From NCBI GenBank assembly GCA_002189035.1, contig CM007989.1:558001-622000 (forward strand): a stretch of DNA of 64,000 nt, written 5' to 3'. Both the position numbers and the translations under genes were made by a program. This stretch comes from Utricularia gibba. Lineage: Eukaryota; Plantae; Magnoliophyta. The notes under the pieces were generated by a model. The model ran no database searches. It had not been told where the DNA came from and was given only the letters and a program-made list of their open reading frames with translations. Each line of letters opens with the position of its first letter. The stretch's first letter is position 1. Below are positions 28,390-50,048 of this stretch, piece by piece.

Positions 28390-28480
28390 AAGAGTACAAA
28401 CTCTCGATTTCTCCTAGAAACCGAAACCGTCGAGAGATCTGGAGCAAAATTTGATCTGAGAAAAAAAGTGCAAAATGCGA
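28390..28480 (-). promoter_or_regulatory. Putative 5'-UTR exon and donor of the YOS1-like gene; copy 1 of the leader shared with clathrin heavy chain
   Basis: Reverse complement tcgcattttgcactttttttctcagatcaaattttgctccagatctctcgacggtttcggtttctaggagaaatcgaga|gtttgtactctt. Confidence 0.7.
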
Positions 28481-29030
28481 AAAAGTCGCTACCAAACGAA
28501 GCTTAATGCTCTAAAGTTGCTACGCGATTCTGCATGACGCAGCTGTTGTTTACCATAGCGCCTTCCTTCAGTCGAGATGCGTCCCTGCAAGAGGTAGGTC
28601 GGGCCTGCGCAAGCATAATTCGGCCCATTGGGCCTTTTCGGTCTGGCCCACACCCTAAAGACATCTTCAAATTGCGCTTATCGAATACAAGAATTCACAA
28701 ACAGTTTCCATGTAAGAAACTGGTACCAAGGCAAAGCAGAATCAACGATTACGCTCCCAAAGCAACCCTAGACCAATTCTGGGCATGGGAGCCTGCAGGC
28801 AGAACTGAAAATTAAATATTATCAAATTTCTAAAACAAACAAAACACTAAGCACACGCTATTAAGAATTGCAACCAGGCCCTTGTGTTGCGTTTGTATTG
28901 TTGGAAGGCTCTCAAACAATTGGAAAATCATATCCAGACACGGGTTCCAAATCATGGGAAACACAGAAACGTGAAAATTAAGGCAGACTCGAGGTCTATA
29001 AGGTAAATAAGGCGGCAGCAAGCTTCCAAA

Positions 29031-30490
29031 TCAATCAAAAAGGCTGAAACCCATGTCATCATCAGACTCCTCAGCTGGCTCTTCTTTCTTCTCCTCCACA
29101 GCAGCAGGGGCAGCGGCAGAACCAGCGTCGGCTGCTGCTGCTGCCGGAGCTGCGGCGACAGCAAATTTGCTAGGATCCTGTAGAGAGGAATCAATCAGGA
29201 TTAGATGTACGGTGTACTGGGGGGGCAGACGGGGCAAGAAAGAAACCGGTAGCTTACTGCGAGATACTCCTTGACTTTGTCAGCTTCAGGGAAGGAGTAG
29301 TCTGTTTCAACAGCGATAGCCAAGACGTTCTTGTAAGCATTGATAAGCATGTGGGGCGCAGCTGCAAGAGTGGGATATGAGATGGCGAGAGAGAATGCAG
29401 TCACCAGGGAAACCCCGGATGCAAACTTCTCGACAAGGTCATCTTCGGTGAGGTCCAAAACCTCTGGGCTGAAGACGGACCCATTGTCGTACACTGAAAC
29501 GACTATCAGTCCATATGAGAAGGGCCTTATTCCAAGTTTCGCCAGGAGTGCAGCTTCAGAAGAACCAACTTTATCTCCCTTCTTGATGAGCTCTACCGGG
29601 GTAATAATCTCAACTGTACCCTTGTTGATTTTGGTGGGAATATTTAGAACCTGCATGAGTATCGACATTGGTTACTACATCACCTTAACGAAATAATGAA
29701 AATGGTCAGAGACAATTCACGAATTCGCTACCTGGAAAAAGGATGTCTGGGATGGATCCAGACCAGTGTTGCCTGGTGGAACAACCACATCAATGGGAGC
29801 TACTAGACCAACACGAGCAGGAGCCCCGACCTATTAACAATCATGCACAACAAGTCGGTACTCATCAACTGTCATACAAAGCAATCCAATGCACAAAATC
29901 AACAGTATCTGGACACAGGACTTCAGCATTGCTTTTAGAATGGACTTTCTATAAAAAATGTTCTAAAAATAAAACAATGGCATACATGCTTTCTTCGTAT
30001 AGAAACCAATACAACAGAAATGATAGAAAAGTGTTCACCAAAAGCATCGGCACGATGCTTACCTTGTACTTGGCAATCTCTTCGCTGACTTCCTTTAGAT
30101 CTCCCTTTGTGAAAATCAGCCCAACATTTCCCTATCAAGTAAAATAAACAAAACAAGGAATTTAGAATACAAATTCGGAGGCCGGAGTCTCAATATAATA
30201 ACGAGGTTACGGCCGAGCAATGCAATACACACAACAAGCAAGGGGATAAGGTTCAGAATGGCAGTGTTTCCCGTCTTCTCCGCGTGGATCCTGACACTCC
30301 TCTTTATCATAGTGTTTTTCCCCATGAGAACCACGGAATCACCACGCAATCCCTTTCTAATTGCCTGCAGCTGATTCGACCCCACGTTATCGGCAATCGC
30401 CACCAGAACCTGAGTATACTCGTCGAGCAACTGGCAGAGCTTCTTGTCATAGTTCACCTTCTTGTCCGCCTTTGAAATCTTAGGAGCCAT
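29031..30490 (-). CDS. RPP0: 60S acidic ribosomal protein P0 (uL10), multi-exon
   Basis: [53 protein letters not shown]-terminal [13 protein letters not shown]. Confidence 0.98.
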
Positions 30491-30893
30491 CTCTACAACA
30501 ACAAACAACACCTACGTACAAGGAAAAACAGGGCCAAGACGAAGCGACGATTGCTTGCCAAGGCGGACAGCGGCGGCCGTCACTTTAACCTGAAGATTCA
30601 GATTTAACAAAATGCAACCGCAGACGGGGAGAGGCAGAACCCTAGATCCCTGCCTTCCGCATCACTGTATACATATATATACACAGAGAGAGAGAGAAAA
30701 AAAAAAGAAGCCCATAATACCGGCCCAACAAACAAGTATGTGAGTTGAGCATCACTGTATGTTACAGCAATCTGATTTCCGAGAGGGCCTTTCTCTTCAT
30801 CACCTTTCCCCTGCTTTGCTCTACCGCGGCTGATTCCGGAGGCGGCGCCGGTGTTCGCCTGCCATCAACCACCATCCTTGAAGATCAACGGCC
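30491..30893. promoter_or_regulatory. Divergent promoter RPP0/WIYLD gene with telo-box-like and site II motifs
   Basis: gaaccctag (~30637), agccca and ggccca (~30709-30727), TA/GA microsatellite; established for ribosomal protein promoters. Confidence 0.55.
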
Positions 30894-31579
30894 ATGCCTC
30901 CGCGAACAGAGGTTTCTCCGATTGATCATCAGAGAAGAAATACCACCATTTGCCTCCCTCTCTGGGTTAAAATACTCGTTTTTTGTTTCTTGTAAACTAA
31001 TGTTAACAGGTGGGTTTAAGTAGAAAGCACGCGGCGTTGGATGCGATGCGCCCCATGGGATTCCCCAACTCCGTCGTGCGGAAATGTCTGAATGATCTCC
31101 TCAAGGTTTCAGAATCTCCCGAGTCATCATCGTCGCCTTCCTTCCGAATCTGAAAGATCGGATTTTGCTTCCAGGTTTACGGGAAAACCGGCTGGGCTTT
31201 CATCGAAGCGGATGCCTACAAGGTGCTTATCGAGACCATTCTCGAAGAACTTGAGAAGCCTCCTCCTGAAGATGATCAAAAGCAGCCTTTGGCGATAGAA
31301 GCTGGTGAAGATGATAAACAACCCATTCTTCTCCTGGAGGTAAAAATAGTTGCAGACACTTTATTATCGCTGGTTCTTCTGCGAGGTGGGAGAATGAAAA
31401 GAGTGATTTTTCAGGCGCCCAAGTCGGTGGAAGAGACTGGGGCCGGTAAAAGAAAACCATGCCATGGGTGGATTGGGGCTGAGGATGATGATGATTTTGT
31501 GTACTTGGAACCACTTGATCCGCATGGCTTCGATTACCCTTGCGCTTCAGGCGAGGTTCACTCCAACAATACTCAATGA
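30894..31579 (+). CDS. Small WIYLD (ubiquitin-binding, SUVR-type) domain protein, ~4 exons
   Basis: Spliced MPPRTE|VGLSRKHAALDAMRPMGFPNSVVRKCLNDLLK|VYGKTGWAFIEADAYKVLIETILEE...|...RKPCHGWIG; the 3' end is uncertain. Confidence 0.8.
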
Positions 31580-31882
31580 AGAGTTGTTAAGATCTCAACC
31601 TGATACAGAGTTTTTCTTTGATGCTTACAGAGGTTCCGGAGTCACAAAGCTCTCAGATGCCTGATGAGCCAGGACGCCAGCGCAGCAAAAGAATCGCGAA
31701 ACCTCCTCCTTGGTTGCCATTCTGACTCCAATCCAGGGATTCGCTGGAACCTAGACATTGTGGACGAGGAGAGATTTTACAGCAACGGATGATTGAAGCT
31801 GAAGGTACGGATTCAGGTATTGCAGCCTATTGATTGTGTAGTTTAGAGCTTGGATGCTGACAGAACTTACTTAGATTTCTGG

Positions 31883-32311
31883 TTAAGATCGGTTGGTATC
31901 GTAATCGAGAATTTCTTTATGAGCCACCGATCTGGAGTGCTGGACGATGGATCTACCGATGGCGTTGATCCAGTCTTCCTTCTCCTTCTCCGAATCGGCG
32001 ATGAAGTACATCGGCTCCTCGCCGGTTGAGATCTCGAACGCGAATTCTCGATTCAGCACATCCTCCGCGCCTTTCACGGTGACGCAATTCGCCGCTAGGA
32101 TAACGCCGCGAGGCTTCGAATCGGGCGTTACGTTTGATTCCTTGAACCAGAACAGTCTCCCTCGCTTCAGAACGAACCACCGGCGACGCCAGGTCTTGAT
32201 GTACTCCCCTTGCTTCATTAGCCACCCTGCGCGCTCCGGTGCGCTCCAGAACTCCACTCCGCCGTAATCCTCCTCGCCGGATCCCATCGTGGCTCGCCAT
32301 AGACTCAACAT
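31883..32311 (-). CDS. PH1: Pleckstrin-homology domain protein (AtPH1-like), single exon
   Basis: MLSLWRA..EDYGGVEFWSAPERAGWLMKQGEYIKTWRRRWFVLK...FIADSEKEKEDWINAIGRSIVQHS. Confidence 0.93.
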   Translation of the reverse strand: MLSLWRATMGSGEEDYGGVEFWSAPERAGWLMKQGEYIKTWRRRWFVLKRGRLFWFKESNVTPDSKPRGVILAANCVTVKGAEDVLNREFAFEISTGEEPMYFIADSEKEKEDWINAIGRSIVQHSRSVAHKEILDYDTNRS

Positions 32312-32851
32312 CGATCCGTGGTCGGTCGCAGCTGAAGGAACGATGATCGAATTTTCCTAGAATCTTATCATCCACGTTCGGCGAATCAATCAATACTCGT
32401 GCATCTGCACCACAAGGGTCACGCTTTCCGGTCTCTTCCTCGAAGCCACGAATGGGCCGGGCTGGTGCTCGAATAAGCGTAAACCCAACCCCGACCCATC
32501 TCCATGTTTGAGCGGATTTGCACCAGGGGATTCTTTCCCTTTTCTTTCCTCCATTGATCAGTGAACATCCATTTCCGAAGCTACTACTAAGTACACAAGG
32601 TTAACAAACAAACAAAGAAAAGGTTAACCCTTGGAATACTCTGTGCTGTCCCTCTTTGTCGCATTCTACTCACAACTGCATTGCAGGTTTTCAGGTAGTA
32701 TCCTTCCCTGAAACCGGTGACCTCCCTGCACACCTTCGGCCTTTCTGAAAGTTTCTCCAGTTTGCAGTCAGTGACTCAAGATAGCATGCTCTGATGATTG
32801 CAGGAGTTCACCTACGTGAACCAGCTTTCACTTGGAGGCATGATGTTGATC

Positions 32852-35800
32852 TTAATCACAGCTTTCCCTGGTTTTCAAGGTAGATTCGATGAGCTTGACC
32901 TTTTTGCTGTTCTCACTATTTAAAAGAGAGAGCTTTTCGAGTGAAGATTTAAGCTGACGCATCTCATCCTCCGCCCGACTTCTTGCCGGGGATTGCAGCT
33001 GTGGGGTTTTTGATTTTCCCTGAGGAGAATGCTGGTGTTTCTTCAATCTTGCGTTCAGAGCCTCGATGGCTGAGTGCAAGGCACCCAACTCCATCCCGGT
33101 TAATCGATCTGCAGATAGATGCAACCCTTTGTGAAATGACTAGCCAAACCAGAATGCAAAAAGGTGCCTAGACAAACAATTACCGAGCTCGGATTTGAAA
33201 TCTCTCTCTGCTTTTGAAAGAGGTTTCTTGTGTAATCCAGGTACGTTCCTCAGCTTCATTAAGCGCTCTTCAAGAGCAGTGTGCCGCTTCAGGGCTTCAT
33301 CTATTCTATCTTCAATCTGTACATGTTTCTCTTCAACATCCAACAGCTTCTGCTGAATTGCTCGCATGCGAGATGCCTGATTCTCAACCATCTTCTTCAC
33401 CTGAGGCCCATGATGCTGGAGTTCAAAGTATACCTACAAGTGAAACAAATCATGCTATGCAGTCAGCACTTGAGTTACCTGAAGATACTAATTGACCATT
33501 ATCCATGGAGTTCAATCATCTTCTTCAGCCATACCTTGTATGCATAATCCACATAATTTTCATGGAGGAGTGTGAAGAACTGATTGAGCATAGACCTTCC
33601 TTCAATGGAGTCAGAACTTACGTTGCGTGAACTTGCTGCAGAGGCAGGCAAAAGAAGTGGCTTTGGCCCGACAAGGAGCTCTTTACTGATTATGGTGTAA
33701 GGAGTCTCCGTATCACCCATTTTCTCCCCATCTGAAAAGAGAGTTTCCCTCAGCTTATGAATATCAGAACGCAATACGCTCTCCATCTGTAATACCAGGC
33801 ACTCATTTGCAGATGTGATTCCCACAATCCAAGAATTCCCAAACGGGTCCAACAGAGGAAGACAACCACGAAGAGGGGATGGTACTGAAGCATCCCCAGT
33901 TCCGGTAGTAACAACAGGGAGAACTGATGGAGGCTTCATCCGCTCATTTTTCCTGCTTGTAATGCTGGTGAATGGGAGGAAATGCAAGATAATGGAATCT
34001 ATTCCCCCAGCATGAACACAAAGTACACGTTTAGGGTCAAGAGGATCTGCCATCATGACCAGGTTGGATGTAGGCTTCTTGGGCAGAGCTAAATCGACAA
34101 CAGCCAGCCTTAGCAATGGAGGGGGATGGCCCAACCAAGCAGCAGAGTCCTCAAGCTTCATCAATGGCTTCTCTTGTGGATAACAAGGCTCACAAATTGT
34201 AGCAGCACGGAGGATTTGATCTGTTGAGCTGAAGGAGGTTCTTGGTGCAGAACCAGAATTCCACACCGGGTGAACTTCATCAGCTAAAGCATCAATTTGC
34301 AATTGACCACCACCCCAAGCAGTAACAAGGATTGAGTCTTTTCCAACCAAATTGTAAAGGAAACTGACGGCATGACCCTCGAATACTGCCTTCTTGTCTC
34401 CATTGGTTTTCTTCATATCATGGCGTATATTAGACAAAGGTCCCTGTGATTGAGGATATTCACACTCTAAATAAGCAAACTTAATTACATGGTTGGAAGA
34501 AAATCACACCACATGCTTCAGAAGAGAACTAGTGCAGCACCTGCAACACTACTGATGATTCCGACAAAACAAAAGGCCGAGCCTTCACAGCCTTTGGTTT
34601 TCCAGTATCTCTAGGTTGTTGAACTAAATCTGGGAATGTAGCCTCCAGCCAAGATAATGCAGCTCGAGCATTCTTAACCGCTTTTGGATCAGAAGATTTC
34701 AGTCCAGTGGCTTGCGTGTCATGGTACAATTCCAAAATTGATTCCCACGTATATACACTGGGAAAACAAAGTATTTCAGAGTCAAACGAAACAAGATCAT
34801 CAAGAACAGCAGCAGCAACAGAAATTCTGAGTTCCAAAAATAGTGAAAGATAATCATGGGAAAAATACCTTCCAAAAGGAGCTACAGCACAAATTACGAA
34901 GCAAGATCCATCACTAAACAATATAAACACCTGAAAATTTAGAAGGGTCTCACATTATCATGTGTATAATAAGGGATGGTGATATGAACCAGGAATGAGG
35001 TTTCAGCTATCATCAATAAATGTCACATATCAGAAGCACCAGATCCGCATAAACTCCACAGCATAAGATTGATTATCTTTTGCAAGTTAAGCAAGATGGA
35101 CTATGTCTTACACTAAATCTATCCCACATGTGGTCTCCACCAAAGGAAAAATCAACTGGACATATGGCTGCTGCATGTGAAGATTTTCCCCCTTCTATAG
35201 GTTGCAGATAAAATTCTTGCTCTGGTTTCCCGAAGTCATTGGACAGATCAAAAATTCTGCAGAAAAACTTCCAGGGTCATTGGAGCTCTTTTGGCTTGGA
35301 AACTCACAGAATTAGGATCGTACAATAGACTTATTTCCAAAGAAAAGCATGCTATCACATCTAATTAGAGGTGCCAGCCATAACAAACAGCTTTTCCAAG
35401 GATATTTGCATTAAAATGAAATCTAGCGTAACAATGATCAGCGTTGATGCAATAGCAATCAAGCGAGCTAGAAGAATATAAGAGAAATGGATCTCGACAA
35501 ACAAATTATCCATTTCAGATATCAATGTAGCCAAGAAAAATGATGAGACAGGAAAAAAACTCACCTAAACACAGAATCAGATGACAGAATTCCCACGTGC
35601 ATGTTACTGTAAGGGTGCCAAGAAACCTGGAGTACTCTTAGTGAACTATTTCCGTTGAAATAGATCTCCGAACCAACTGACGAAGTACTGAAAAAGAAGT
35701 AAGGGTTAAGACAAAAAATTGTGAATGCTTATTTTAGAAAAAAAATGCTTTGATTTTTCCAAATGGAAGAAAACTATTTATACAAACAAAAGGTCCAGGA

Positions 35801-36636
35801 GTACTTAAGTGCACGGAAATATGTGAGCAAACACAAGATAAGGGTTTACCGACATATGATGGTATTTTCTTGCATTGAAGTGCGCCCATGGAGGTACATA
35901 AGCTGTACTCCCTTCACACCAACAAGCAACAAAACAGATCCATCTCTGTTTATGGAGATCTTATTGACCTCAAAATTCAATGGAACATCTGGTCGTAGTA
36001 ACTGTAACAAAAGATCACCCGTAAGCATAGAGGCCAATTCTCGGAGTTTACGCCCCTTCGGATCTATTAAAATAAAAGGACTGCTCGATTGTTGAGCCGG
36101 GTACCACCAAGTCAGGATACCACAACCCCAAAAAAAGGCACATAATCATTCAAAGTTTCACCTCAAGATCTTAAATTCAATGTCAAAAATTTATTTTTTA
36201 GTCCAGAATCGAGAGCGTGAGGTCAAGACACCGATCCCCATTCAAAATAAAACTAAAGCAAGTTCACAATAGCAGAAGTCGTGCGTTGAAAAAGCTCTCA
36301 CAAGTCTCCCGGAAGTGAGTTTTCACTCAGAGAACAACAAACCTTAGATGGCGAAGCAGCGATGACAGAAGAAGGGTCGGGCTCTCCTAGCCGAACCGAG
36401 ATCCGGTGTACGCACTCATCTTCATCATCCCAGATATAAACACGCGACGAAGCTTCATCCCAGGCAATGAGATTGGAAAGCGTTTCCTCCCCCGAGTCGG
36501 TAGCCTTTCCTGAAGAGAAAAGCGGGTGATTCTGCAGTGGAACCCACACCACCTCCCCTTTGGAAACTGAACTCGACGCCGTAGTCGCGGGAGCTCGCCG
36601 GCTCCCTGTTTCAGCAACATCCAAAGCAAACCTCAT
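32852..36636 (-). CDS. NUP88: Nuclear pore complex protein NUP88 (MOS7-like), multi-exon
   Basis: GEVVWVPLQNHPLF, LRVLQVSWHP, DFSFGGDHMWDRFS, VFILFSDG, LAVVDLALP, LHENYVDYAYKV, coiled-coil C-terminus. Confidence 0.9.
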
Positions 36637-37000
36637 TTTTCCGACCTACCTTCGAATCCCACCCCCACCCCCGCACCACGCCAAGTCCCAAGGGCTGTGA
36701 ATGGAATTGCCGCTCTCCAGATTTCCTTTTTTTCTGCTTTTTTTAAGAATATTGAATTAAATTATATAATATATTTGAAGAAAAATACCAAATAAAATTT
36801 TTATTCATATAACAAATAATATACACATTTTTAATAAATCATCCATAACAAGCACAGGGTAGAGAAATGGGGGGAGCCAGCTTCTGAAGCCATTGTACAG
36901 AGATCCTTGAGTTCGGCCTCAGCAGCAAATTGAGAATCCTTGTTGCTGAAAGAATATTAACCTACAAGTCTTGGTTTGCATTGCACCGCCGGCAACCGCA

Positions 37001-38605
37001 TCATCCGAACTGATTCGCCGGAATTCCATGCTTTTCGAACCATTCCGGCATACAGAACTTCTCATACAGAAAGGGGCGTACATCTTTCTGCAAGGACAAG
37101 TGCTTCAGCAATGGGAGGATCACTTCCATTAGCTTTGAAGCAGATATAAAAATGTCATCACGCTTTAACAATGGTGTAAAGGCAGCATTTTGTCAATGGG
37201 GTTGTATTGTATGCATCATACCTGCTCGTCTCGAGGTTGACAAGCTGAGAAGGGGACACAGGGGATTCCATTCAATGGTTGCAGCAAGAAACTAAAGGGG
37301 TTGTTGTCTACAATGACCACCCTGCACAGATCCTTTGACAAACAAGATAGGTCCTTTACATGGTCACGATACTGCCTGCAATTCACCGAGAAATCCCGAT
37401 TCATTCGAAAAAAATGCATATGAAGATGATGAACACAGGATGTAACAGAAGAAGATCACTGCTTCCAAATGAAATGGCCATACTGAATCAGTGAACTTAC
37501 GTGCTGACAGTTGAAGGCCGGTAGAGTCGACGACCGAACACTTTGTTCACATCTATTCTGTCTACAAGTGGTCTTGCATAACCTGTGGGGGGATGAAGAA
37601 GAGCAGAGAGCTAAGCGAAGTATTACAGAAACATATGTATGCCTGAGCTTTAAAATCAACATAACAGAAGCTGACTGGGGAGAGGAGTGACCTTCTAGGC
37701 CAGCAGTAAACAATACTACATCTGCAAATTCACTGAGTTGCTTCAGAAAATCCTTCAATCCCGGCCTCTCAAAAACAGTTACATAGTTGACCTTAGGTTT
37801 CCCTTCATTCTCCTTCAATTACCATCAAATATTACTGATACTTACTAACAGCCTACTCATACATGTCCAGCAGAAACTAGCTACTCACCTTGTCTGGAGA
37901 GTAGCACTCTAGTTCAAACCAGTTAATCCCTGCTTCTGTAGCTTGGCAACGTATATTAACCGGCAAACTGGAAGATTCATATGCACATACAAGAGTTTCA
38001 TCCAAATCAAGAACCACCTGCAGGTTGTAACTAGACGTGATTACAAGGCAATCTGAATCAGGGGGAGCGAGCAATCATCACTGAAATCGTCCTCCCTCAT
38101 CAGTCACAGGTTTCTACATCAACGTGAAGTTTTTAGAGGGATTCTAGTGTTTGTATCATGCAAAACCTTCCACAAAAGCCGTAGAAAGTGATTTCAGGGC
38201 ACAACCCTTGAAGCAGTTTCATAGAATTAGTAATTGTTTGTATCAGATTCCCAATCTATGTCTCTTTAATGCCGAAATAATTACCATTAGCTTCTCCATT
38301 GGAGCGCCATCACCGCTTCCGGGCTCAGCATCCGCTACTGAAACCGAGGACGAACGCGGCGTCTCCTGCGTCCCTGTTTCCCCTATTTCCTGCATCTCAA
38401 CAACCGGGACAGGCTTGAACTGGAACTGCGGCGTCCCTGGGGCGGAAAACGAGTCCTGACGCCGGCCGACGTACGATACCACCTGCGCGAACGACGGCGC
38501 GCTGCCAAGGATCTGCGCGAAGATCTGGAAAAGAAACCCCACCCAGTCCACCATCACCCTCCAGACCTGTATCGTCCGCGGCGCGTAGACTTCATTCGCC
38601 GCCAT
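37001..38605 (-). CDS. CTD small phosphatase-like (SCP/NIF, HAD superfamily), multi-exon
   Basis: VVLDLDET (DxDxT), VFERPGL, YRDHVKDLS, VIVDNNPFSF, ends MPEWFEKHGIPANQFG*. Confidence 0.92.
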
Positions 38606-39475: not shown

Positions 39476-40486
39476 ATCAAAAAAATAACTTCCGAATTCC
39501 GTTTACTACTGCTACTTTAATAAATCCATTTTTAACTCGGAGCATTCCGTACATGTTATTATCTTTTTGGATGGGAAGCATGGCCCGAACACATCGGTGC
39601 TTTGTGTGCCCTAATTTGATGCGATGGAAGGGCAATGGGCGACTGGTCCCCCAAGGAGAAGAAACATTGGATAGCAAGCAGCAGGGGCGGGGGTGGACCA
39701 AGCCCCAAGGTGAAGAGTGAAACACGCAATGCCCTGATTCGAGGAAAGCGACTCGCTCGCTCCATTTCAAGAACCGACGAGGATCCGATCCGCATCCAGA
39801 CCCGTCTGCCTTCAAGTCCCCAGGTGGTGGGTGGTTGGGTCGTCTCGGCTCGGCCTCTTCGCGCCTTTTCGATTCCACAGAGGCCGTCTTTTCTTCGATT
39901 CAACGCAGCATTTTGGCAGTTGCAGGTGCAGGGCTCATGTTCCGGGTCGCGATTGAGAAGTGTGACCTTTGAAATTTGTTTATTTAGCTCGGGGGGAAAA
40001 TGTGGCCCCCACGCTCCACGTGCATGCGAACGTGGTGGGTTGATCCGGTGGGACCCACGTTCAAAATTATACCCACATGGGATTTGCCCCTTTTTTTTCT
40101 AGGGTATTTACACTCTCGTTCGTTTAAAATCCATTTGGGTAAGATTTATGTTTAAAAAATATTAAAATTTTAGAATTATTTATTATTTTTTAGAAGATGA
40201 AATATTCCAATATTTAAATTTTGTTTAACATTATTTATCAAAAAATGATTTTACAGGGTGAAAAATGAACTGGGGTGGATGCGGCTCCGCCTGAGAAACC
40301 GCCATCTTCTGTTGGGGAGCAAAATGTACTCCTTAAGATAAACTGTTGCGCCATCTCACTAACGAAGATGACCAATACAATAGGCTTTAACTTTAGTAGT
40401 CGTCTTGTTTCGATCTAATGTCTGTAACGAAACAAATGGGTGATCCTGAAGTGCACCCAGCTCTGCGGTTTACTGGAGATGCCCAA

Positions 40487-42127
40487 TCACGAGTTGCGGT
40501 GATTCGGATCCGTCTGGTAGTAGACGATATCTCCGGTGGCAGAGACGAAGTGATCCCTGTTCAGGCTCTTGGCAATAGTTTTCAAAAGGTGAAAAGGAAT
40601 GGGATATGACTTCTTGGGTTCTCTGTAGTATTTCCCTAGAATCGGCTTCGCTGCTTCCGTCTGCAATTCACCCATAGCTCAGGCCAACCTAGTTTAGAAA
40701 CAGAAACAGAAAAAAAACTCACTGCTTGTTTCAGATGATAGTGTGGGATTTGTGGGAAGAGATGATGAATAACATGGGTTCCAATGTCATGGTGGACGTT
40801 GTTTATCCATCCATAGTCCCGATCCACCGTGGTAAGGCTTCCCCTTAGGTAGCTCCATTCCTAAACAACGCATAGATTGCAGTAACTCACGAGTTTCTTT
40901 GTAAAATACTGGATTTGCTCACCAACCTTGCCACGGTACCAAGGAAGCTTCTCTTCATCTCCATGGTGATGCAGATAGGTGACTAAGTCAAGCCACATCA
41001 CGAAAACCTGCACCCATATTTTTAAGTAGATGTTTATTATCGGTTTCTCAAGTTCAAAGAACCAAGGAAACCATGGTGGATTACCAGGTAAGGAACACCA
41101 TAGAGCTTGAGTAGTTGGAGAGGGCCTATAACGAACGTGAGCCCTGCCAGTGCCCCTGCCATTGCCGCCCAACAAATGCTTGATGTCATAACTTGTTTCT
41201 CTCATTTGGGGAACAAATCGCTGTCTGGATCAAAGTGTGAGCCGCTTTTCCCCGGGCTTCTGTTGACCTGAGGCGAGATGAGGGATGGAGACTAGGTAGA
41301 AAGGTTCCATGCAGGAGGTGTGTGCTCATAGCTTTGCTTAAGCGAGATGCTTACCAGATAAAAGGGATATGCCAGTAAAGGGAAGGGCAATGTGAACCTG
41401 AGTTTCTTAGTGCTATCACTTAAATTCTTGTACTCGTTCTCATTCAACTGCAAGTGATCCCATAGAAAACAACCGATCAAAATCAATCTTTTGCTGCTAG
41501 AAATTAAGGCCTCACCGGATGCCAGGATTCGTCGTTCTCGACGTCCATGATTGTGATGGTGATGCCTGTGGCTAATCCTCCTAGATGAGCACTCAATGTA
41601 ACAGTAGAGTGATTGAAAGAAAACCAAGAACATCATCACTTGATCCAAATACAGAAACATGCATACCAGCCATTGTAAGGCACCAGAATCGAAGAATGAA
41701 GCAAATGTCCCACGAAACTATTCAACGTGGGATTATCTGAAAAACTTCCATGGCCACTGAAAACGGAGGAGACCAATGAATAAAAATACAAATTCGAATT
41801 TCGAAAAGAACAGTCGCACCAGTCATGGCCGAGGACAAACATTGCCCAGAACATTGTCCCCTGCGCAAGCCAATACAGAGGCCAAAAGAGCCAGCTATCG
41901 AAATACCCCGCCGCGACCGCCAACCCAACGACCACGGCAACATCCCTCGCCACGTAACTCATCGATCGCCATGTTTCCTTCACCCAACACTCCTTCGGAA
42001 TCGCCGCCCTGATATCCGACATCTTGAACGACGGCGCTGCCCCGAGATCGAAAGCATTTTCGCTCTCGTTCGCCTCTCCTCCCATGGCACGCTCAAGTCT
42101 CGACGTTGGGGTGCCACTCTCCTGCAT
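40487..42127 (-). CDS. Omega-3 fatty acid desaturase (FAD3/7/8 family), 8 exons, disrupted as assembled (2-nt loss ~41543; in-frame TGA at 41202-41204)
   Basis: His boxes HDCGH, HRHHH, HVIHH; [29 protein letters not shown]; canonical family intron positions. Confidence 0.9.
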
Positions 42128-42615
42128 TGTTGCAAACTTGTATTTCTTTATTTCGATTAACTTAAATAAAAAAGACAAATTTGATCGTGACTTGATTTTT
42201 GATTTGTGCTTTAAATTTGATAAATGAATTACGATTAAACATTTTTAAATTACGAATTTTTATGATATAAAATAAATTAAATTTCTTTAAAATGAAAAAC
42301 AATGAATAATGACCTAATTCTAATTCAATCATGATTCAATTATATTTCAACCATAATTTAATATTTTATATATAATTATATTTTTTATTCAATCATAATT
42401 TAAACATTCGTATAAGTAATTTATACAAAATTCAATCTTATGATACAAAAATACATATAAAAATAATATGAAAATGACGTTGGAAAAGCAGCATTTTGGT
42501 TTGGATCCACCTTTACAAATGAAACGCTTCTTGGGTATATATACTGTCTGAGGGGCACACAGACAAGATTCTTGAACTCAATCCCTCGCACTTGCAGCAA
42601 TGGATGGTTGGCTGG

Positions 42616-45600
42616 TTACAGATTCCACCATTTCCGCTTCTCCATTGTCTTGGCGAGCTCCTGAGCCATGGAGGCGAAGTTCTCCGCTCCGCTTTGTAGC
42701 TCCTCCGTTCTCCGGCTGAGTCTCTGCGGTGACACAGAAAGATGACTGATTGTTTGTTTATTAAAGGGGACTGGCTGGTTCGGAATGCTCCCTCCATGGA
42801 AAGCTCACAGCATCCTGGAGTTGTAGGATTTACCTCAAGCTTCTCCTGGCGCTCTATGAGTTTGTCCCTTGCCTGCGATGCTGCACTTGCTGCAACCTGA
42901 AAACCGGGAAGTTCCATGGATTATCTCTGTGCATGTACTTCATCAAAATAACGAAGTTGAGATGCTGGAGCTAGAGGAGGAAGCCGCTCACGTCTGGCTT
43001 GCGATACTTGGCGATGATTTCTTCTCGTGTTCGCATTCTTGGCTTATCATCACTAGAACCTCCTTCGAACAGCTTTCTCCTGTCGCCCTCATTGTCTGAA
43101 AACCAGAAAGGTATGAGGGTCTCAATGATGCTTGAAAAACCAGAGCAGGGAAAGGATTATGCAAGTTTTACCTTTGATTTCATAAGTAACTTTGGAGCTT
43201 ATGGGCTCTGGCTCATCGATCTCAATGTCAATGTCATCTGGAATAAGCGATTTCAGCAGCATATTCTTTTCTTGAGAACAGAAAACCAACAAGGAGAAGA
43301 GAAGGTAGATTACCTATTCCGAGTTCCGTCGCATCGAGATCATAAGGACTGGAGAATGGAAACCTCGAAAATATTCTTTCCAGATGCTCTGCTAACATCC
43401 CTTGAGCTTCATTGTACTCCATGCTATGACTTGATTTAGATGCCTTCAACCCCTTCTTTATCATGTTGTTGACAAATCCACTGATAGCACTCTGTCGGAG
43501 ATGACCATGATTAATGAAGAAGAAGGAAACCGCATAAACATAGGAGTGAGTTGAACCAACCTTGTGTTTTTTTGGGATTGTTTTGGTAGAGGCAAGGACC
43601 TTATCATGTAGGCAAGGAAGCGACTCAGGAATCCTGAAATGGTTGTTTCTAGTTAGGGCTCCGGATATGAGACAGGGAAAAGTAGGCCATGGCAGGGGAT
43701 TACCTGAGCTCATTTTCGGATGCTGAAAGCGACAGTACAGCAAATTCATTACCATTTACCTATAGAAAGAAGGCATACAGGAGTCAGTTGCAAATACAGC
43801 ATAAAGGTTGGCAGCTTAATGCATACTGAAGAGGAGGCAACAACCAGTGCGATCAAGCCCTTCTTTGAAGCACTCATTGTCCTGTCCATGTTGTTCTTGA
43901 AGTTCCATCTCAAAATTGACATCAATGAGGTGCAGCTCAACAGTTGGAACTCTGGAAGAGTCCTAAAAGAAACGCCCATGTTTTGCACACAAACCAGTGA
44001 GTGGAAAAGTGTGATTCTACAGATATTTCTGATGAAATGACTATTGTGTATTCTATATGCGAATGCAACAAAAATGCATGAATTTTTACCTGATGTCAAT
44101 TTCGCCCGTTTGATACAGGAGTACCAGTTCACAATTGTCTACACCTTTCTTGAGGACTGCTGTCCATGAACATGGCTTCTCAAGTTTCAACTCTCGGATG
44201 GGTACTTTATCGCCCTGAGTCAAAAAATACTTGCTAGGAATCAGCATCTGGGGTTAACAGCGGTTAGATGAAGGACTTCATTAAAACTAGCTAGAACCTG
44301 AAGCAATGACTTCAACGCATACAGGAAGACTACTTCCTCACAACAAAGTAAAATCTGAGAATCCAGTGTCACATCTCCAACTTCTGATGTACTGCTCTGG
44401 TTTGTATCATGAGAACCAGTCGGTTCTACACCTGAAACAGATCGAATATGATGTAAATACTGGAGAAGAAAATACAACCTGACCACGTGACAAAAGCAAT
44501 ATCAAAAACTTGCCTAAAAAATGAAAGTTTATCGCAACCAAGTTTTCTTTATGATGGGAACTAAGTACGTTGCCGCTGCTGGTTTCCATCAGAACCATGC
44601 ACGCATCTCTAGTACAAACAAGAGCAATCTCCCTAGCAGATTCATAAACAGAGGCATGATCTGAGCTATCTTCTGTTGTCCTTGGATTATCAGGAGAAGT
44701 TGTAACAGCAATAGAAAAGATAGGAGATGAGCCCGCGAAACTGTCCACTATAAGTAAAACTGATGGCGAACCAGTGTCCAAAACCATAACCTGTATCACA
44801 GTCCACGGTGTTGTGGGAAAATATAATTATTTGAGAGTTGACTGAGTGTATTTTATTTCAAAAGAACAAGTACCTTTCCACATTGAAATCCAGATAGAAG
44901 TTTTGCACAGGATTTCGTAAATCGGAGAGCACGTACAGGAGATTTAAATATGGAATATATTATAGAGCAATTGTTCCTCTCTTCAGGTTGACAATGGTGA
45001 ACTGCCAACAAACTACATTCAGGGTGTAGCATTTTAAGGAGATATGAAACCTTTAAGTACCAACACAATGGTTGATAAAACGGTGCTAGAAATAAAGAAA
45101 AGATACTGATTTCATGTCACCACATGAATAAAGCTAAGAGACATGACTCTACATGCCATTTGTTGCTATTCAACCGAGAAATGAACGCATACCATAATGC
45201 TTGGATTCTGTATGAACTGCAATTTTTTTGTGACTGGAATTCGGATCTAGAGAATAAAGAAAAATCTGTGCAGAACAATAAGTGATGTCGTTAGTCAGCT
45301 CATTAAGGATGACAACAGCAAAACACATCTCTCCTTACCAGACCAGATTCATTTCCAACAGCAAAAGTTAAGGTAGGAATAGATAAGTCCAATGCTGTCA
45401 CTGATGAACTTGAACCCTCAATTGGGACACTTGTAACCTGCCAACGCACAATACATGAACTATGAATGAACATGTGCTGCACAACAGGGAGAGGAGATAG
45501 CAACTTTCAGTAGTGACCTCCTGTCCAAATACAGAAACCAGGGACAACACTGGTACTGTGGCATCCCAGATTCGGATGGATCCATCTTCATACCCTCCAA

Positions 45601-48197
45601 TGTACATTCTTTCCACTAAGTTTCTTTCATCAGCACGTATTTGATGCATGACACCACCTGCAAAAGGCCACTTTGACTTCCCACCAGCTGCTGAATTATC
45701 AGATTGATGCGTTGTACGTGAAACTGCCTAATAAAACTGTAACTGATCATTGCAATGAATGAATAGATGAAGGAAGCATGTACCATGCAAGATCATTTTT
45801 GAGTACCTCAAGAATTTTCTTTTCTAAGTCAATGGTGTAGAGTTTTCCAATAGTCATGTATGGATCCACAGTGGGTATGATGGAGCAGTATTCAGACGAA
45901 TCTATCATGTGGTTTTGTCCTTTTTCAGACTTCATGACAGATAGGGAAGCATATTCAGAGAAGTGTAATTGTCCTGGATTGGTCAAGATAAAGAATGAAG
46001 TGTTACTGGAACTTCTGTTATCCTCTTCATAAGAATTTGATATTACACATAAGTCCGCAAAAGATCCATGAAGCCTAAGGTCAACTCGGTCAATGCACTT
46101 CAATTTTGCTAGACCAGATGACCAATCAAGATCAAGGATCTGCAAAGGAATGAATATAAAATGAGGATATGAAGCCTTGCTAGGAATCACAACTTCATAC
46201 TGACTAGATGTCCTCATACTTTATATAAACATAACGAGTACATTATTGTATACAAACACGTGTAACAGAAAGAAGTGAGCATGAGACATGTGTAAAGAAA
46301 AGAACGGACCGTCAGCACTTCCTCTGATCCGATGTCTTCACCACCATAGACAAAAAGTTGGCCTCCATTCCTACTTTGAGTTTTGTTAGAAGACCAGTGA
46401 AGTACAATGACTGGTAGTCTTCTGTCTCCTGATGACAGCTGAATCTTCACAACATCATTATGAATTTTTTGACTCGTATGACTTTTTACATCATCTGAAA
46501 CAGACAGGTCCCACAGTAAAATATCTCCATCCACGTAGCCAACAGCAAGAAATGATCCATCGACTGACACCCAACAGAGAGAGCTTATTTCCTTTTCCAT
46601 TTCTTCTTCATCTGATGCATTTTGGTTGGCATAGTTCTCGTTATTTGAAAAGCTCACAATCATGCTCTCCTTCAGCTCAAGATCCTTATTTCCCTTGACG
46701 TGGATGGCTCTATCTTCAGTGACATCCCACAAAACAATAAGACCATTTCCATATGCAATCAGTACCCTATACATATTTGGAGGTTATCGTCAATGACCTT
46801 TCTTTGCAATGAAATCATGTAAACTGCTAGCAACTGAAACAAAAAAAAAAAAAATGGCATCCAATAATATGCTTAATCCATCATCTTCTCATAAGAAAAT
46901 GAGAAGCAATCTCATGTAGAAGGTTTCTGGGGTAAATACATAGAATAAGGCCATTTAAACATGTACGAAACGGGATAAATGAACTTAGAAAATCAGAAGT
47001 AAAATTTACCTGTTTCCACTTGAAAAAGGCTGAGGTAGTACGCCAACTATGGACTGATGATCAGGCATCGGAAATCCAGTCCCCTCTACAAACCAAAGAT
47101 GAAGATGAAATAGATGAAAGTATACAATTCACCATCTCAAGAACACAGAGCAGTCAGACGAAACACAAACTTTGAGATGGGCAAGTGAAATCCTGATGTT
47201 ATAGATCAATCATGATGGACAGAAAAATAACCAGTATGTTAAACATGAATATCTACCAACAAATTTTTTCATTGTCAATTCAACCCTCACAGCCATGTTC
47301 CTTGCTGCATTTGACATCTCAAAGATCCTCGATCACTGATATCAAAGTGTATAGGTATTAAAGGTTTTTATCTAGAATGAACAGGTACCAGCAATAAGAT
47401 TTGGTGGCATATGGTATGGCAACTGAAGAATATTCCTTTGTTCGAAATCATACTTTAACACAGATAGAAATCCATACTCATCTCCTGCATACCTGAATGG
47501 TCCAAGAATATCAATGAACAAAATGTTCATCTGCGAGATGCTAGAATACATAACTTACAAATCTCTTACATATAATTGGTACCAGAGATAACAGAAAATG
47601 CAGTAATATTGGACTCCCACTGTATGGAACAAGCTATAGATCTCGTTGCCAGATCCCAAATCTGTCAAGGTTACATTCGTGTGATGAATGAAACATGGAA
47701 TGTTAGATAAATGAACATATCATGCAATTGTACCTGAATTTCATTTTCACTGGAGACACTCACTAGAAAACCTTGGTTTTGAAAAAACTGGGGAAAAATG
47801 AAAAAAAAAAACCAGCATAAATAGATAGAAACTATTTTTCGTGCATCAGAAATATAAATGAGATACAAACGCAAACCTGTAAGTTCTTGAATGGTAAGGC
47901 TTTGGGAGACATAAAAAGCCCTTCTATACTGTCTCCACCAACCACTTTAATTCTTCCATCTCTGCAACAAAATACAAATATGCTCGGATGTTGCGTTTGT
48001 CACTTGATCCAAAGTTTGGCAACAAATAGGGAAAATTACAGCAACAAGTAAGCAATAATAAACCTCAAAAGGGGTTTTTTGACTCACAGTGTCCCTACTG
48101 CTAAGAGGCGTTGGATAGAATCGAAAGCAAGGATTGACGCAGTCGCTGGTATGCCATAATGAACAGCAACAATGGGCACAGATTCTGATGATGCCAT
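42616..48197 (-). CDS. Tomosyn/lethal-giant-larvae-like WD40 protein with C-terminal R-SNARE-like coil, many exons
   Basis: HYGIPATASILAFDSIQRLLAVGTL|DGRIKVVGGD, GYEDGSIRIWD, ends RLSRRTEELQSGAENFASMAQELAKTMEKRKWWNL*; start codon uncertain (an upstream exon is possible). Confidence 0.88.
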
Positions 48198-49827
48198 AAT
48201 TTAGTCAGATGAATACAGCTGCGAAAAATGGAAAAAGAGTTCATGGGTAAGAAAATTGGAAAACAGGAAACCGGATCGGGGAAAATTCCAGGAATTTCTT
48301 TCCTTGAATCGAACCTCATGAACTTAGTCCAAAAACAAGCTCCTCATTCCGCATCAAACTCAAAATTTCCATCTGGGATCGCAATTTCACGTACAACCCA
48401 ACCCAAAATGGAACATAAACAGATGATAAAAGCTCAATAAACTTTGAATTTTCAACAGAAGCTGTCTATTAAGGCCCAATCAAATCATTGACACTAAATC
48501 ATTTCCATTTTCCTCTCAATACACTAAATCATGGAGTGAATCCTAAGGCACCTGGATCAGAGGAGGAAAATGGGATAACAAAGAAACCCACCACTAGATG
48601 CCCAGCATATGTGAAACAGATTGAGAGAAAAAGATTGCTGACATTCACCTGGGAATAAACGAGAAGACGTGGCTTCCAAGGTTGATTGGGATTGGAGAGT
48701 AACAAGTCAAATCAAACTATTAAAAGCATCTAATGGTCAATTTTCGCAGTTATAGGTTCGACATTTTGCCTCTTCATTACGTACTCCTTTTCCCCCATGA
48801 TTCAGATCCTCTGGTCGGTGGAGAAGATCTTGATGCTCCAACGGTCGACACGGCACCAGTTCGAATCTCGAAGAGGACGCTTCAAAACAAAAAAAAAGGG
48901 AAAATTATTCTTTTTTATTTTCCATGGCACCACGTGGATACTGTTTGAATATAATTATTAATATTTAATTTACACTGGGCACGTGTTCATAAGCCCAACT
49001 GAAAAAAGGGCCCATCTACCTCTATCAGCGGCCCAGATCCACTGAAGAAATCTCTGTATATTATAATTTTAGGGTTGTGGTAGCAGGTTTTAAATACGAA
49101 TAAAACTAATTCATAAAAAATCAGTGTATTCTGAACCTAATAACCATATCACATATTGGTTAGGTATTCTTCTAATCTTATATAAAGGTTTTTCTTGAAT
49201 TGATAAAACGTAAAACTATAATAATTGGATATAAACTGATCTCAAATTGAAACTATAATAAGATTATGGTTTGAAGACTCTATTCTCATATATGAAAGTG
49301 GTATATAATCCATATAGTTATTTAAAAAAGTTTAATTTTTTAAATATATTAAAAATAATAGAAAATTGTTATTTTAATTATATTAAACAATCAAACAACT
49401 CAATTATATAATGTTTAATAATTTAAATTCATTTTTTAAAAGTATAATTGTTTTTTTAAAATACCTTTTGTGAAGACATTTTTATCAAATAATTTGTTTA
49501 CATGTTTTTTCAATAATTTTTTTGGGAATAATTACTTATTTTTAAGTAATTTATATATAAGTATTTATAATTGTTATTATGTTTTAAATATTATTTTATA
49601 CATAAATATTGAATAATAAATATTTATATACAAAAATATATACTTTTCGACAGTTTTTTTAAAAATATTGGATAAAAACATTTTATTTTAAAATATATAA
49701 TATATATTTTTATCTACAAAAACAATTAAAAATTCAAACAAGTGTGGATACCCTTTTTGAGTCTCGGTGTTCTCTGCCCCCTTCTGCCTCATGTATCAAT
49801 CCCGTAAATTTCAACAGAAAAGTCTCC

Positions 49828-49837
49828 TATATATAAG
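49828..49837 (+). promoter_or_regulatory. TATA box of clathrin heavy chain gene
   Basis: tatatataag ~20-30 nt upstream of the pyrimidine-rich leader. Confidence 0.55.
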
Positions 49838-49855
49838 CGCTCATTTTTTTGCTAG

Positions 49856-49961
49856 TCGCATTTTGCACATTTTTTTCCCTCAGATCAAAATTTCTCTCCT
49901 CGTTTTCTCCAGATCTCTCGTCGGTTCCTGTTTCTAGGAGAAATCGAGGGTTTGTACTCTT
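49856..49961 (+). promoter_or_regulatory. Putative 5'-UTR exon and donor of clathrin heavy chain; copy 2 of the leader shared with YOS1-like
   Basis: tcgcattttgcacatttttttccctcagatcaaaatttctctcctcgttttctccagatctctcgtcggttcctgtttctaggagaaatcgagg|gtttgtactctt; candidate intron 49950-50024 then ATG 50049. Confidence 0.7.
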
Positions 49962-50048
49962 CGCCTCATTCTCTGTTCATGCACTGATACTGTTTGCTGT
50001 CTAGATTCGTCTACAGTTTTCCAGATCCGGAGTTTTGAGTCGCTTACC

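What the first reader, a model, noticed from the sequence alone, without database searches (positions are those of the whole stretch)
28390..49961. Near-identical structured 5' leader shared by two unrelated membrane-trafficking genes (YOS1-like and clathrin heavy chain)
Seen: the reverse complement of 28390-28480 aligns collinearly with 49856-49961. Both begin tcgcattttgcac-T-run-ctcagatcaaa, and their last 55 nt (ctccagatctctcg...gtttctaggagaaatcgagRgtttgtactctt) differ at only 4 positions. Both end in a GT donor at the same position (28401 minus; 49950 plus). The genes share no protein homology, lie 21 kb apart and face opposite ways. The core can fold as an outer stem CUCUCG/CGAG(A/G)G, a 5' bulge and an inner UUUCU-AGG-AGAAA stem-loop; the A/G difference keeps pairing (A-U vs G-U), and the outer stem ends on the donor G. 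Established: Yos1 acts in ER-Golgi traffic and clathrin in vesicle coats. Inference: either a cis-regulatory RNA/DNA element co-regulating trafficking genes (translation, splicing or mRNA localisation), or a leader/promoter exon captured by duplication. I do not know it as a described element.
Basis: partly seen in the sequence, partly recalled or inferred. Interest (0 to 1): 0.8.

Follow-up and report, generated by a model that had tools for sequence, protein, structure and literature searches.

The report
Clathrin leader fragment copied into YOS1
A roughly 100-base piece of the start region of the clathrin heavy chain gene (core promoter plus untranslated leader, parts of which are conserved in clathrin genes of other flowering plants) has been copied 21 kb away into the untranslated first exon of a small YOS1-like gene; it is a real but fairly ordinary local duplication, not a shared structured RNA or a shared splice leader.

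Summary
The sequence match is real: the reverse complement of 28390-28480 aligns with 49856-49961 (86 matches, 5 mismatches, 15 gap columns; 59-nt core 91.5% identical). It is the only such pair in the window.

Both copies are transcribed. RNA contigs put the minus copy inside the non-coding exon 1 of the YOS1-like gene (at least 28525 to 28331). The plus copy lies in the unspliced clathrin heavy chain (CHC) leader.

The proposed common GT donor is not used in either gene. YOS1 splices 70 nt further on, at GT 28330 with AG 27786. The CHC transcript reads straight through the GT.

The proposed fold is no better than shuffled sequence, has no consensus structure across orthologues and has no Rfam match.

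CHC is the source. The Orobanche CHC leader aligns with the element across its 3' boundary, and CHC leaders from water lily to banana carry the same telo-box-like AGGGTT(T) core. The Genlisea YOS1 leader lacks the element, and the YOS1 copy has mutated that core.

Best reading: a short DNA-level copy of the CHC core promoter and leader, probably drifting neutrally. Earlier notes of this scan describe several other gene-front-end copies elsewhere in this genome, so this is one more member of a recurrent, known kind.

The parts
49856..49961 (+). Source copy: CHC core-promoter/leader segment (from about 23 nt before the 5' end of the CHC mRNA contig to about +83)
   Evidence: Alignment with the minus copy. 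It aligns with the Orobanche CHC leader, score 168 against 63.6 +/- 13.4 for 3000 random 120-nt pieces of the window, none reaching it.
28390..28480 (-). Derived copy, embedded in the non-coding exon 1 of the YOS1-like gene
   Evidence: It is covered without interruption by RNA contigs X3 record 8 (28330-28503) and X9 record 10 (28370-28525).
28331..28525 (-). YOS1-like exon 1 (non-coding; minimum extent, the 5' end may lie further upstream)
   Evidence: RNA contigs and joints. No ATG in it (read).
27786..28330 (-). YOS1-like leader intron, canonical GT..AG (run X3). Run X9 shows an alternative, non-canonical joint at 28370/71 to 27784/85.
   Evidence: joints table (skips 545, CT..AC on the + strand with cut +1).
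27523..27756 (-). YOS1/IER3IP1-like CDS (77 aa plus stop), in exon 2, which starts at 27785
   Evidence: translation; 94% identical to the Genlisea aurea Yos1-like protein; PF08571 in the hits.
28398..28405 (-). GAGAGTTT: mutated telo-box-like core in the YOS1 copy.
   Evidence: AGGGTT is absent from YOS1 exon 1.
49946..49953 (+). GAGGGTTT: telo-box-like core (AAACCCTC on the other strand, 7 of 8 of the canonical AAACCCTA).
   Evidence: AGGGTT lies 85-170 nt before the ATG in 6 of 8 CHC loci, against a background of 0.083 per 300 nt.
49830..49838 (+). CHC TATA box (tatatataa), outside the clearly shared segment
   Evidence: It aligns with the Orobanche TATA.
49879..49886 (+). CTCAGATC, an initiator-like motif. 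The CHC mRNA contig of run X3 begins here. Its counterpart in the YOS1 copy is at about 28460-28453.
   Evidence: loose end behind 28448 (24 letters, the reverse complement of CTCAGATCAAAATTTCTCTCCTCG). The fit to an initiator consensus is my own reading.
50049..50093 (+). CHC coding start (15 codons of exon 1). The exon is continuous with the leader.
   Evidence: The loose end shows the CHC transcript running from the element into 49962-49991 without a splice.
28600..28655 (-). Cluster of site II-like boxes (TGGGCC / GGCCCA) upstream of YOS1 exon 1: the gene's own likely promoter
   Evidence: Similar boxes lie upstream of Genlisea YOS1.

Best explanation
The shared sequence is a short DNA-level duplicate of the transcription-start region of the clathrin heavy chain gene. 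It covers about 23 nt of core promoter, an initiator-like CTCAGATC, and about the first 80 nt of the 5' UTR, including a telo-box-like GAGGGTTT. One copy landed, inverted, 21.5 kb away inside the already existing non-coding first exon of a YOS1/IER3IP1-like gene. This probably happened after the bladderwort lineage split from Genlisea. In YOS1 it is simply carried along in the 5' UTR. It supplies neither the observed transcript start (which is at least 45 nt upstream) nor the splice donor (70 nt downstream), and it is decaying. The likely origin (inferred, not shown) is templated 'filler' synthesis or a small segmental copy during repair of a DNA break at the open YOS1 promoter/leader. In CHC itself the segment is old and partly constrained, most plausibly as a DNA-level promoter-proximal element (initiator plus telo-box-like motif), not as an RNA structure.
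For: The match is far beyond chance and there are only two copies in the window.

The boundaries are sharp. The flanks show no significant similarity: downstream 990/2000 shuffles do as well, upstream 92/2000. The copied piece was therefore short.

Polarity points to CHC as the source. The U. gibba-type CHC element aligns with the leader of Orobanche gracilis CHC2. In one search the score was 352 against 200 +/- 20 (0/1000 shuffles). In one search that leader was the best place in the whole locus on either strand. In one search a 35-nt block was 30/35 identical, and 0 of 3000 random window pieces scored as well. That alignment continues across the 3' end of the shared segment (CTCTTCGC) in CHC but not in YOS1.

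CHC leaders of Vitis, Prunus, Nymphaea and Ensete keep the AGGGTT core at a similar distance from the ATG. It is present in 6 of 8 loci, against a background of 0.083 per 300 nt.

Genlisea aurea YOS1 has the same architecture (site II boxes, non-coding exon 1, leader intron), but its leader gives only baseline similarity.

Of the 5 core differences, the two that can be polarised cleanly against Orobanche are changes in the YOS1 copy. One of them is the G>A inside the telo-like core.

Transcription was read. YOS1 contigs carry the element joined to the CDS exon, with the donor at 28330. A CHC contig carrying the 5 CHC-specific letters begins at 49879 and runs on unspliced into 49962-49991.

The similarity starts 23 nt upstream of that contig start, which favours a DNA copy over an RNA-derived copy.

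Earlier notes of the scan list several other front-end copies in this genome. These are leads only.
Against: Copy number in the rest of the genome could not be measured. No tool here searches this plant genome, and the DNA run laid did not even return the CHC locus, so that test is insensitive.

Polarity rests on one strong outgroup alignment (Orobanche) plus motif-level conservation in more distant species. Two unnamed CHC loci (L003, L006) and L010 lack an exact AGGGTT.

The Genlisea YOS1 leader shows weak similarity (z about 2-3). That is the same level as unrelated UTR pairs, but remnants cannot be excluded.

The donor could have been another CHC paralogue and not the one in the window.

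Transcript 5' ends come from contig ends, not from CAGE. The repair mechanism is inferred. Neutrality of the YOS1 copy is inferred from 5 substitutions only.
Confidence: 0.72

Rival explanations
1. Functional co-option: the copied CHC start region (initiator-like motif plus telo-box-like motif, acting as DNA, or the leader acting as RNA) is kept by selection in YOS1 and gives it CHC-like transcriptional or translational control, coupling two membrane-traffic genes.
For: The source segment is conserved in CHC genes over long distances, so it probably carries function in CHC. The copy is transcribed in the YOS1 leader. It has no ATG and so adds no upstream reading frame. The YOS1 promoter has site II boxes, the usual partners of telo boxes (Gaspin et al. 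2010, PMC3022908).
Against: The copy has lost what is best conserved in CHC: GGG has become GAG in the core, and the CTTCGC block is not included. Genlisea YOS1 works without the element. YOS1 transcripts start upstream of it. With only two sequences there is no way to show constraint. Membrane-traffic function is the only link between the two genes.
Confidence: 0.13
2. A structured RNA leader, or a common first exon ending on a shared splice donor.
For: A stem CUCUCG/CGAG(A/G)G with an inner hairpin can be drawn, and it is the minimum-free-energy fold of the isolated 59-mers. A GT stands at the same position in both copies.
Against: The GT is read through in both genes, and YOS1 splices at 28330. 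Fold z-scores are -0.57, -1.62, +0.17 and -1.66. In the full exons the two copies fold differently. RNAalifold over the two copies and three CHC orthologues gives only a 6-pair hairpin at -2.5 kcal/mol elsewhere in the sequence. There is no Rfam match even at E = 10.
Confidence: 0.03
3. A fragment of a dispersed repeat or transposable element that happens to lie in both leaders.
For: Genome-wide copy number was not measurable with the tools at hand.
Against: There are only two copies in 64 kb. In the RNA contigs of run X3 only the YOS1 and CHC transcripts matched at 82% or more. The sequence is orthologous to CHC leaders of other families at the same place before the ATG, which a mobile element would not be. 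No terminal repeats were seen around either copy.
Confidence: 0.05
4. Opposite direction: the element is native to YOS1 and was copied into CHC.
For: The T-rich 5' part of the element faintly resembles the start of the Genlisea YOS1 leader (gtagc..ttttt..catttt..ttctc).
Against: The Orobanche, Vitis, Prunus, Nymphaea and Ensete CHC leaders share the core or the neighbouring blocks. The Genlisea similarity is at the level of unrelated UTR pairs, and the YOS1 leader is not the best place in the Genlisea locus.
Confidence: 0.03

Closest known systems
Promoter / first-exon capture by local duplication
   Same: A piece of one gene's 5' end sits at the 5' end of an unrelated nearby gene and is transcribed there as a non-coding leader.
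   Different: The copy here is short (about 100 nt). It lies inside an exon that starts upstream of it, and it supplies neither the observed transcript start nor the donor. The two genes are not neighbours: a ribosomal protein P0 gene and others lie between them, and the copy is inverted. It is an insertion into a leader, not a replacement of a front end.
Filler DNA / templated insertions at repaired double-strand breaks in plants (polymerase theta end joining or synthesis-dependent strand annealing; review PMC8871565)
   Same: The size (tens to a few hundred nt), a template on the same chromosome, either orientation, and sharp ends without flanking homology.
   Different: This origin is not shown here. 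There is no pre-insertion allele with which to read junction microhomology. The review describes filler as mostly templated from the flank, whereas this template is 21 kb away.
Telo box (short interstitial telomere motif AAACCCTA) in plant 5' UTRs, often paired with site II boxes (Gaspin, Rami and Lescure 2010, PMC3022908)
   Same: The conserved core of the CHC leader is (T/G/A)AGGGTT(T), located in the 5' UTR. It is the exact octamer TAGGGTTT in Nymphaea.
   Different: In the window the CHC motif matches 7 of 8 positions (AAACCCTC) and the YOS1 copy 6 of 8. No site II box lies within 300 nt before the CHC ATG. There are no binding or expression data.
Spliced leaders / shared 5' exons
   Same: A near-identical leader on two unrelated mRNAs, with a GT at the same place.
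   Different: The GT is not spliced in either gene. Each copy is transcribed in cis as part of its own gene. There is no separate leader gene or tandem array.

Membership tests
Shared first exon / spliced leader ending on a common donor | The GT at the end of the shared sequence is used as the 5' splice site | tested here: not met
   YOS1 RNA contigs run through 28401-28400 to 28331 (X3, canonical GT-AG intron 28330..27786) or to 28370/71 (X9). The CHC contig runs through 49950 into 49962-49991.
Shared first exon / spliced leader ending on a common donor | The shared sequence makes up the whole first exon, starting at the transcript start | tested here: not met
   YOS1 contigs start at least 45 nt upstream (28525) of the element (28480). 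The CHC contig starts 23 nt inside it (49879). These are contig ends, not mapped caps.
Structured cis-regulatory RNA | A fold more stable than shuffled sequence | tested here: not met
   z = -0.57, -1.62, +0.17 and -1.66 for the isolated copies; -1.25 and -0.97 for the whole leaders.
Structured cis-regulatory RNA | Covariation or a consensus structure across homologues | tested here: inconclusive
   RNAalifold on 5 sequences finds only a 6-pair hairpin at -2.5 kcal/mol, not the proposed stem-loop. However, the distant orthologues align poorly and the two close copies differ at only 5 sites.
Structured cis-regulatory RNA | A match to a described RNA family | tested here: not met
   Rfam 15, E up to 10: only chance-level hits, none on the element in the sense orientation.
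Local duplication of a gene's 5' end (leader or promoter capture) | Two copies with similarity far beyond chance and definable ends | tested here: met
Local duplication of a gene's 5' end (leader or promoter capture) | The source can be told from the recipient using outgroups | tested here: met
   CHC leaders of Orobanche (strong) and of Vitis, Prunus, Nymphaea and Ensete (motif level) share it. The Genlisea YOS1 leader does not.
Local duplication of a gene's 5' end (leader or promoter capture) | The copy is part of the recipient's mature mRNA | tested here: met
   X9 contig record 10 joins 28525-28370 to 27784-27350, which holds the CDS.
Local duplication of a gene's 5' end (leader or promoter capture) | The copy supplies the recipient's promoter / transcript start | tested here: not met
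   Transcripts extend at least 45 nt upstream of the copy. Site II boxes of YOS1's own promoter lie at 28600-28655, as in Genlisea. Minor starts at the copied initiator are not excluded.
Telo box | The octamer AAACCCTA (either strand) | tested here: not met
   Window CHC copy: AAACCCTC. YOS1 copy: AAACTCTC. The exact octamer is present in the Nymphaea CHC leader.
Telo box | Location in the 5' UTR / proximal promoter, conserved across species | tested here: met
   AGGGTT on the sense strand 85-170 nt before the ATG in 6 of 8 CHC loci, against 0.083 expected per 300 nt.
Telo box | Binding by telomere-repeat-binding factors; an effect on expression | not testable with these tools
   Needs ChIP/DAP-seq or reporter assays.
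Dispersed repeat / transposable-element fragment | Many copies in the genome; terminal repeats or target-site duplications | tested here: inconclusive
   Two copies in the window. Only the two gene transcripts matched among the RNA contigs of X3. The full genome was not searchable.

The most novel reading that the evidence does not exclude
This copy may be one footprint of a genome-specific process in this compact bladderwort-family genome that preferentially copies transcription-start-proximal DNA (core promoter plus leader) into the leaders of other genes on the same chromosome arm. An example would be templated repair of breaks at open promoters, using other open promoters as templates. Such a process would keep reshuffling core-promoter motifs (here an initiator and a telo-box-like site of CHC) among unrelated housekeeping genes and would occasionally couple their regulation.
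Probability: 0.25. Interest if true: 0.6.

Novelty: new member of a known kind. Interest (0 to 1): 0.27.

Why it matters
By itself this matters little. It shows that a striking 'shared leader' on two trafficking genes is a small, decaying duplicate and not a regulatory RNA, which removes a false lead.

Two side results have some value. First, clathrin heavy chain genes of flowering plants keep a telo-box-like block in their 5' UTR from water lily and banana to Lamiales, which marks a testable promoter-proximal element of an essential trafficking gene. Second, together with the other front-end copies noted in this genome, the case supports a genome-wide count of such events. That count could show how a very compact plant genome rebuilds promoters and leaders.

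Tried and rejected
1. Exact-sequence look-up of the YOS1 protein, to get spliced transcripts: it is not on record.
2. Rfam scans of both loci at E up to 10: nothing relevant.
3. blastn-short of the leaders against the Genlisea YOS1 locus, a Logan YOS1 contig and two CHC loci: only 9-16-nt chance-level hits. Gapped Smith-Waterman alignment was needed to see the Orobanche homology.
4. Extension of the homology into the flanks. Downstream there is none (990/2000 shuffles do as well). Upstream there is a collinear 23-nt block (28543-28521 against 49783-49805, 18/23), but it is marginal (92/2000). I do not count it.
5. Search for further collinear inverted blocks between the two loci, which would be remnants of a larger inverted duplication: none.
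6. Copy number from the DNA run. Only the locus itself was laid and the CHC locus was missed, so the test says nothing.
7. Search of the scan's index by sequence: blank, which means nothing according to the operators.
8. Literature search for 'telo-box' plus 'clathrin heavy chain': no paper.
9. Reads could be laid on only one stretch (one call). I chose the YOS1 locus, so the CHC evidence comes from a CHC contig that cross-laid on the YOS1 copy at a low likeness threshold.
10. One look-up (Helianthus) returned no DNA. L010 added a CHC leader without the motif.
11. The organism name is coded in the run table. 'Utricularia / bladderwort family' is inferred from the 94% best hit to Genlisea aurea and from wording in earlier notes. 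It was not verified.


Full report
**1. What is there**

Reading both places and aligning them confirms the observation. The reverse complement of 28390-28480 (91 nt) is collinear with 49856-49961 (106 nt), with 86 matches, 5 mismatches and 4 indels covering 15 columns.

- The 59-nt core (28390-28448 / 49903-49961) is 54/59 identical.
- The local alignment scores 115, against 15.1 +/- 2.3 in 2000 shuffles.
- It is the only repeat of 40 nt or more in the window. A more permissive scan between 25 and 53 kb adds only the two 5' pieces of the same element and chance-sized matches.
- Two diagnostic sub-patterns occur exactly twice in the window.
- The flanks are not similar. Downstream, 990 of 2000 shuffles do as well. 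Upstream, a collinear 23-nt block is marginal at 92 of 2000.
- A copy that is about 92% identical in its core and has unrelated flanks means the duplicated piece was short.

**2. The genes**

The minus-strand gene encodes a 77-aa Yos1/IER3IP1-like protein (CDS 27756-27523). Its best hit is the Genlisea aurea Yos1-like protein at 94%, followed by other Lamiales. The window therefore probably comes from a bladderwort-family plant. This is an inference, because run names are coded.

The plus-strand gene is clathrin heavy chain (CHC). Its ATG is at 50049, exon 1 has 15 codons, and exon 2 starts at 50348.

The two genes are not neighbours. A ribosomal protein P0 gene, a PH-domain gene, an Lgl-like WD40 gene and others lie between them.

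**3. Transcription and splicing**

I could lay reads only once, and I chose the YOS1 locus at a low likeness threshold, so that CHC transcripts would cross-lay on the copy.

YOS1:
- In run X9, one RNA contig joins 28525-28370 to 27784-27350. The element is therefore part of the mature YOS1 5' UTR.
- In run X3, a contig covers 28503-28330 and a junction contig skips 27786-28330. On the minus strand this is a canonical GT..AG intron with its donor at 28330.
- Exon 1 is thus at least 28525-28331. The element (28480-28390) lies inside it, with at least 45 nt of exon before it and 59 nt after it.
- The X9 joint (28370/71 to 27784/85) is non-canonical however the 2-nt ambiguity is resolved. It remains unexplained.

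CHC:
- A 350-nt contig of X3 lies on 28390-28448 with exactly the 5 CHC-specific letters.
- One loose end is the reverse complement of CHC 49879-49902.
- The other loose end is the reverse complement of CHC 49962-49991.
- The CHC transcript therefore starts at or before 49879 and runs unspliced through the GT at 49950.
- The shared 'donor' is a coincidence of sequence. It lies inside the motif GAGGGTTT.

**4. RNA structure**

- The proposed stem-loop is the minimum-free-energy fold of the isolated 59-mers, but it is not better than shuffles (z -0.57 and -1.62). The whole elements give z +0.17 and -1.66.
- In the context of the real leaders the two copies fold differently (z -1.25 and -0.97).
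- RNAalifold on both copies plus the Orobanche, Vitis and Prunus blocks returns only a 6-pair hairpin at -2.5 kcal/mol elsewhere in the sequence.
- Rfam has nothing, even at E = 10.

**5. Which copy is the original**

I fetched genomic loci for a YOS1 orthologue and for seven more CHC genes by exact-protein look-up.

YOS1 side: Genlisea YOS1 has the same layout of site II boxes, a non-coding exon 1 and a leader intron. Its leader is not alignable with the element beyond the level seen between unrelated UTRs. It is also not the best-scoring place in its own locus.

CHC side:
- The leader of Orobanche gracilis CHC2 aligns with the window's CHC leader at 352 against 200 +/- 20 (0 of 1000 shuffles).
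- That leader is the best place in the whole Orobanche locus on either strand.
- It beats all 3000 random 120-nt pieces of the window.
- One block is 30/35 identical: tggttctcggagcgatcgagggttt...ctcttcgc against tgtttctaggagaaatcgagggtttgtactcttcgc.
- This alignment continues across the 3' end of the shared segment (CTCTT|CGC) in CHC, whereas the YOS1 copy breaks off there.

More distant CHC leaders keep the core. AGGGTT lies on the sense strand 85-170 nt before the ATG in 6 of 8 loci: the window, Orobanche, Vitis, Prunus, Nymphaea and Ensete. The background is 0.083 per 300 nt. In Nymphaea it is the exact telo box TAGGGTTT. CAGATC and AGATCTC motifs and a CTTCGC block recur around the core.

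So the segment is ancestral in CHC and derived in YOS1. Of the five core differences, the two that Orobanche can polarise cleanly are changes in the YOS1 copy. One of them is the G>A that spoils the telo-like core.

**6. What the segment is in CHC**

- A TATA box lies at 49830-49838.
- The similarity with YOS1 begins at 49856.
- The RNA contig begins at 49879, on CTCAGATC. My reading is that this fits the YYANWYY initiator pattern.
- The telo-like GAGGGTTT lies at 49946-49953.

The shared piece is therefore about 23 nt of core promoter plus the first 80 or so nt of the leader. This favours a DNA copy over a retro-copy, with the caveat that a contig end is not a mapped cap.

Telo boxes are known to sit mainly in 5' UTRs of plant genes and to act together with site II boxes (Gaspin et al. 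2010, PMC3022908). I found no paper that links them to CHC.

**7. Mechanism (inferred)**

Several features fit filler DNA or templated synthesis at a repaired break: a roughly 100-nt piece, copied in inverted orientation from 21 kb away, with sharp ends, into the open promoter/leader of another gene. The concept is summarised in PMC8871565. A very small segmental duplication fits equally well.

Nothing indicates that the copy does anything in YOS1:
- It adds no ATG.
- It is not the observed transcript start.
- It is not the donor.
- It has lost the most conserved CHC features.

Co-option is not excluded. I give it about 13%.

**8. Context from the scan**

Earlier notes on other pieces of this same genome describe at least seven cases of a gene's promoter or first exon copied onto a nearby gene. 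I did not test them. They suggest that this finding is one more instance of a recurrent process, which lowers its individual novelty but makes a genome-wide count worthwhile.

**9. Verdict**

- The 'structured leader with shared donor' reading is wrong.
- The 'leader captured by duplication' reading is right in a weaker form: a short CHC start-region fragment was inserted into an existing YOS1 leader.
- Novelty: a new member of a known kind.
- Interest: about 0.27.

Noticed in passing
window 27784-28371 (minus strand): RNA run X9 (another accession: C>T at 27403, a 2-nt deletion at 27485) joins YOS1 exon 1 to exon 2 at 28370/71 -> 27784/85. The intron ends are GA..GG, GG..AG or GG..CA, none canonical. 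Run X3 uses GT(28330)..AG(27786). A strain SNP creating a GT at 28370-28369 is possible but was not tested.
   Followed up: partly
window 49946-49953; L004 2850-2860; L005 about 2360; L008 about 2331; L007 about 2416; L009 about 2406: Clathrin heavy chain leaders of six angiosperms, from Nymphaea and Ensete to Lamiales, share a sense-strand AGGGTT(T) telo-box-like core 85-170 nt before the ATG. CAGATC/AGATCTC and CTTCGC blocks often lie nearby. This is an apparently undescribed conserved non-coding block.
   Followed up: partly
L004 2974-3003 (Orobanche gracilis CHC2): The ancestral start codon reads ATA (ATAGCGGCAGCC...). The annotated protein starts at an internal ATG nine codons later. This may be a decaying or re-started CHC copy in a holoparasite.
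   Followed up: no
window 49979-49987: A minimal upstream reading frame, ATG-CAC-TGA, lies in the CHC leader just after the shared segment. It is not part of the YOS1 copy.
   Followed up: no
window 28076-28163 (minus), inside the YOS1 leader intron: A weak C/D-box snoRNA-like Rfam hit (DdR16, 21 bits, E = 1.3, far below the gathering score). Probably chance.
   Followed up: no
window 28600-30511: A ribosomal protein P0 gene (29201-30511, minus strand) lies directly upstream of YOS1 on the same strand. A cluster of site II boxes (TGGGCC/GGCCCA, 28600-28655) lies between its 3' end and YOS1 exon 1.
   Followed up: no
L004 3035-3060 (Orobanche CHC2 intron 1): 'ttttcgcattttttctctgatttcaa' resembles the 5' part of the element ('ttttcgcattttgcactttttttctcagatcaaa'). 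It was the best place for the YOS1 copy in that locus (score 142). Probably a T-rich chance match.
   Followed up: no
other pieces of the same genome (earlier notes s1-257877, s1-290770, s1-206357, s1-277530, s1-199657, s1-186719, s1-299275): At least seven other noted cases of a promoter or first exon copied onto a nearby gene. This suggests a recurrent process in this compact genome.
   Followed up: no
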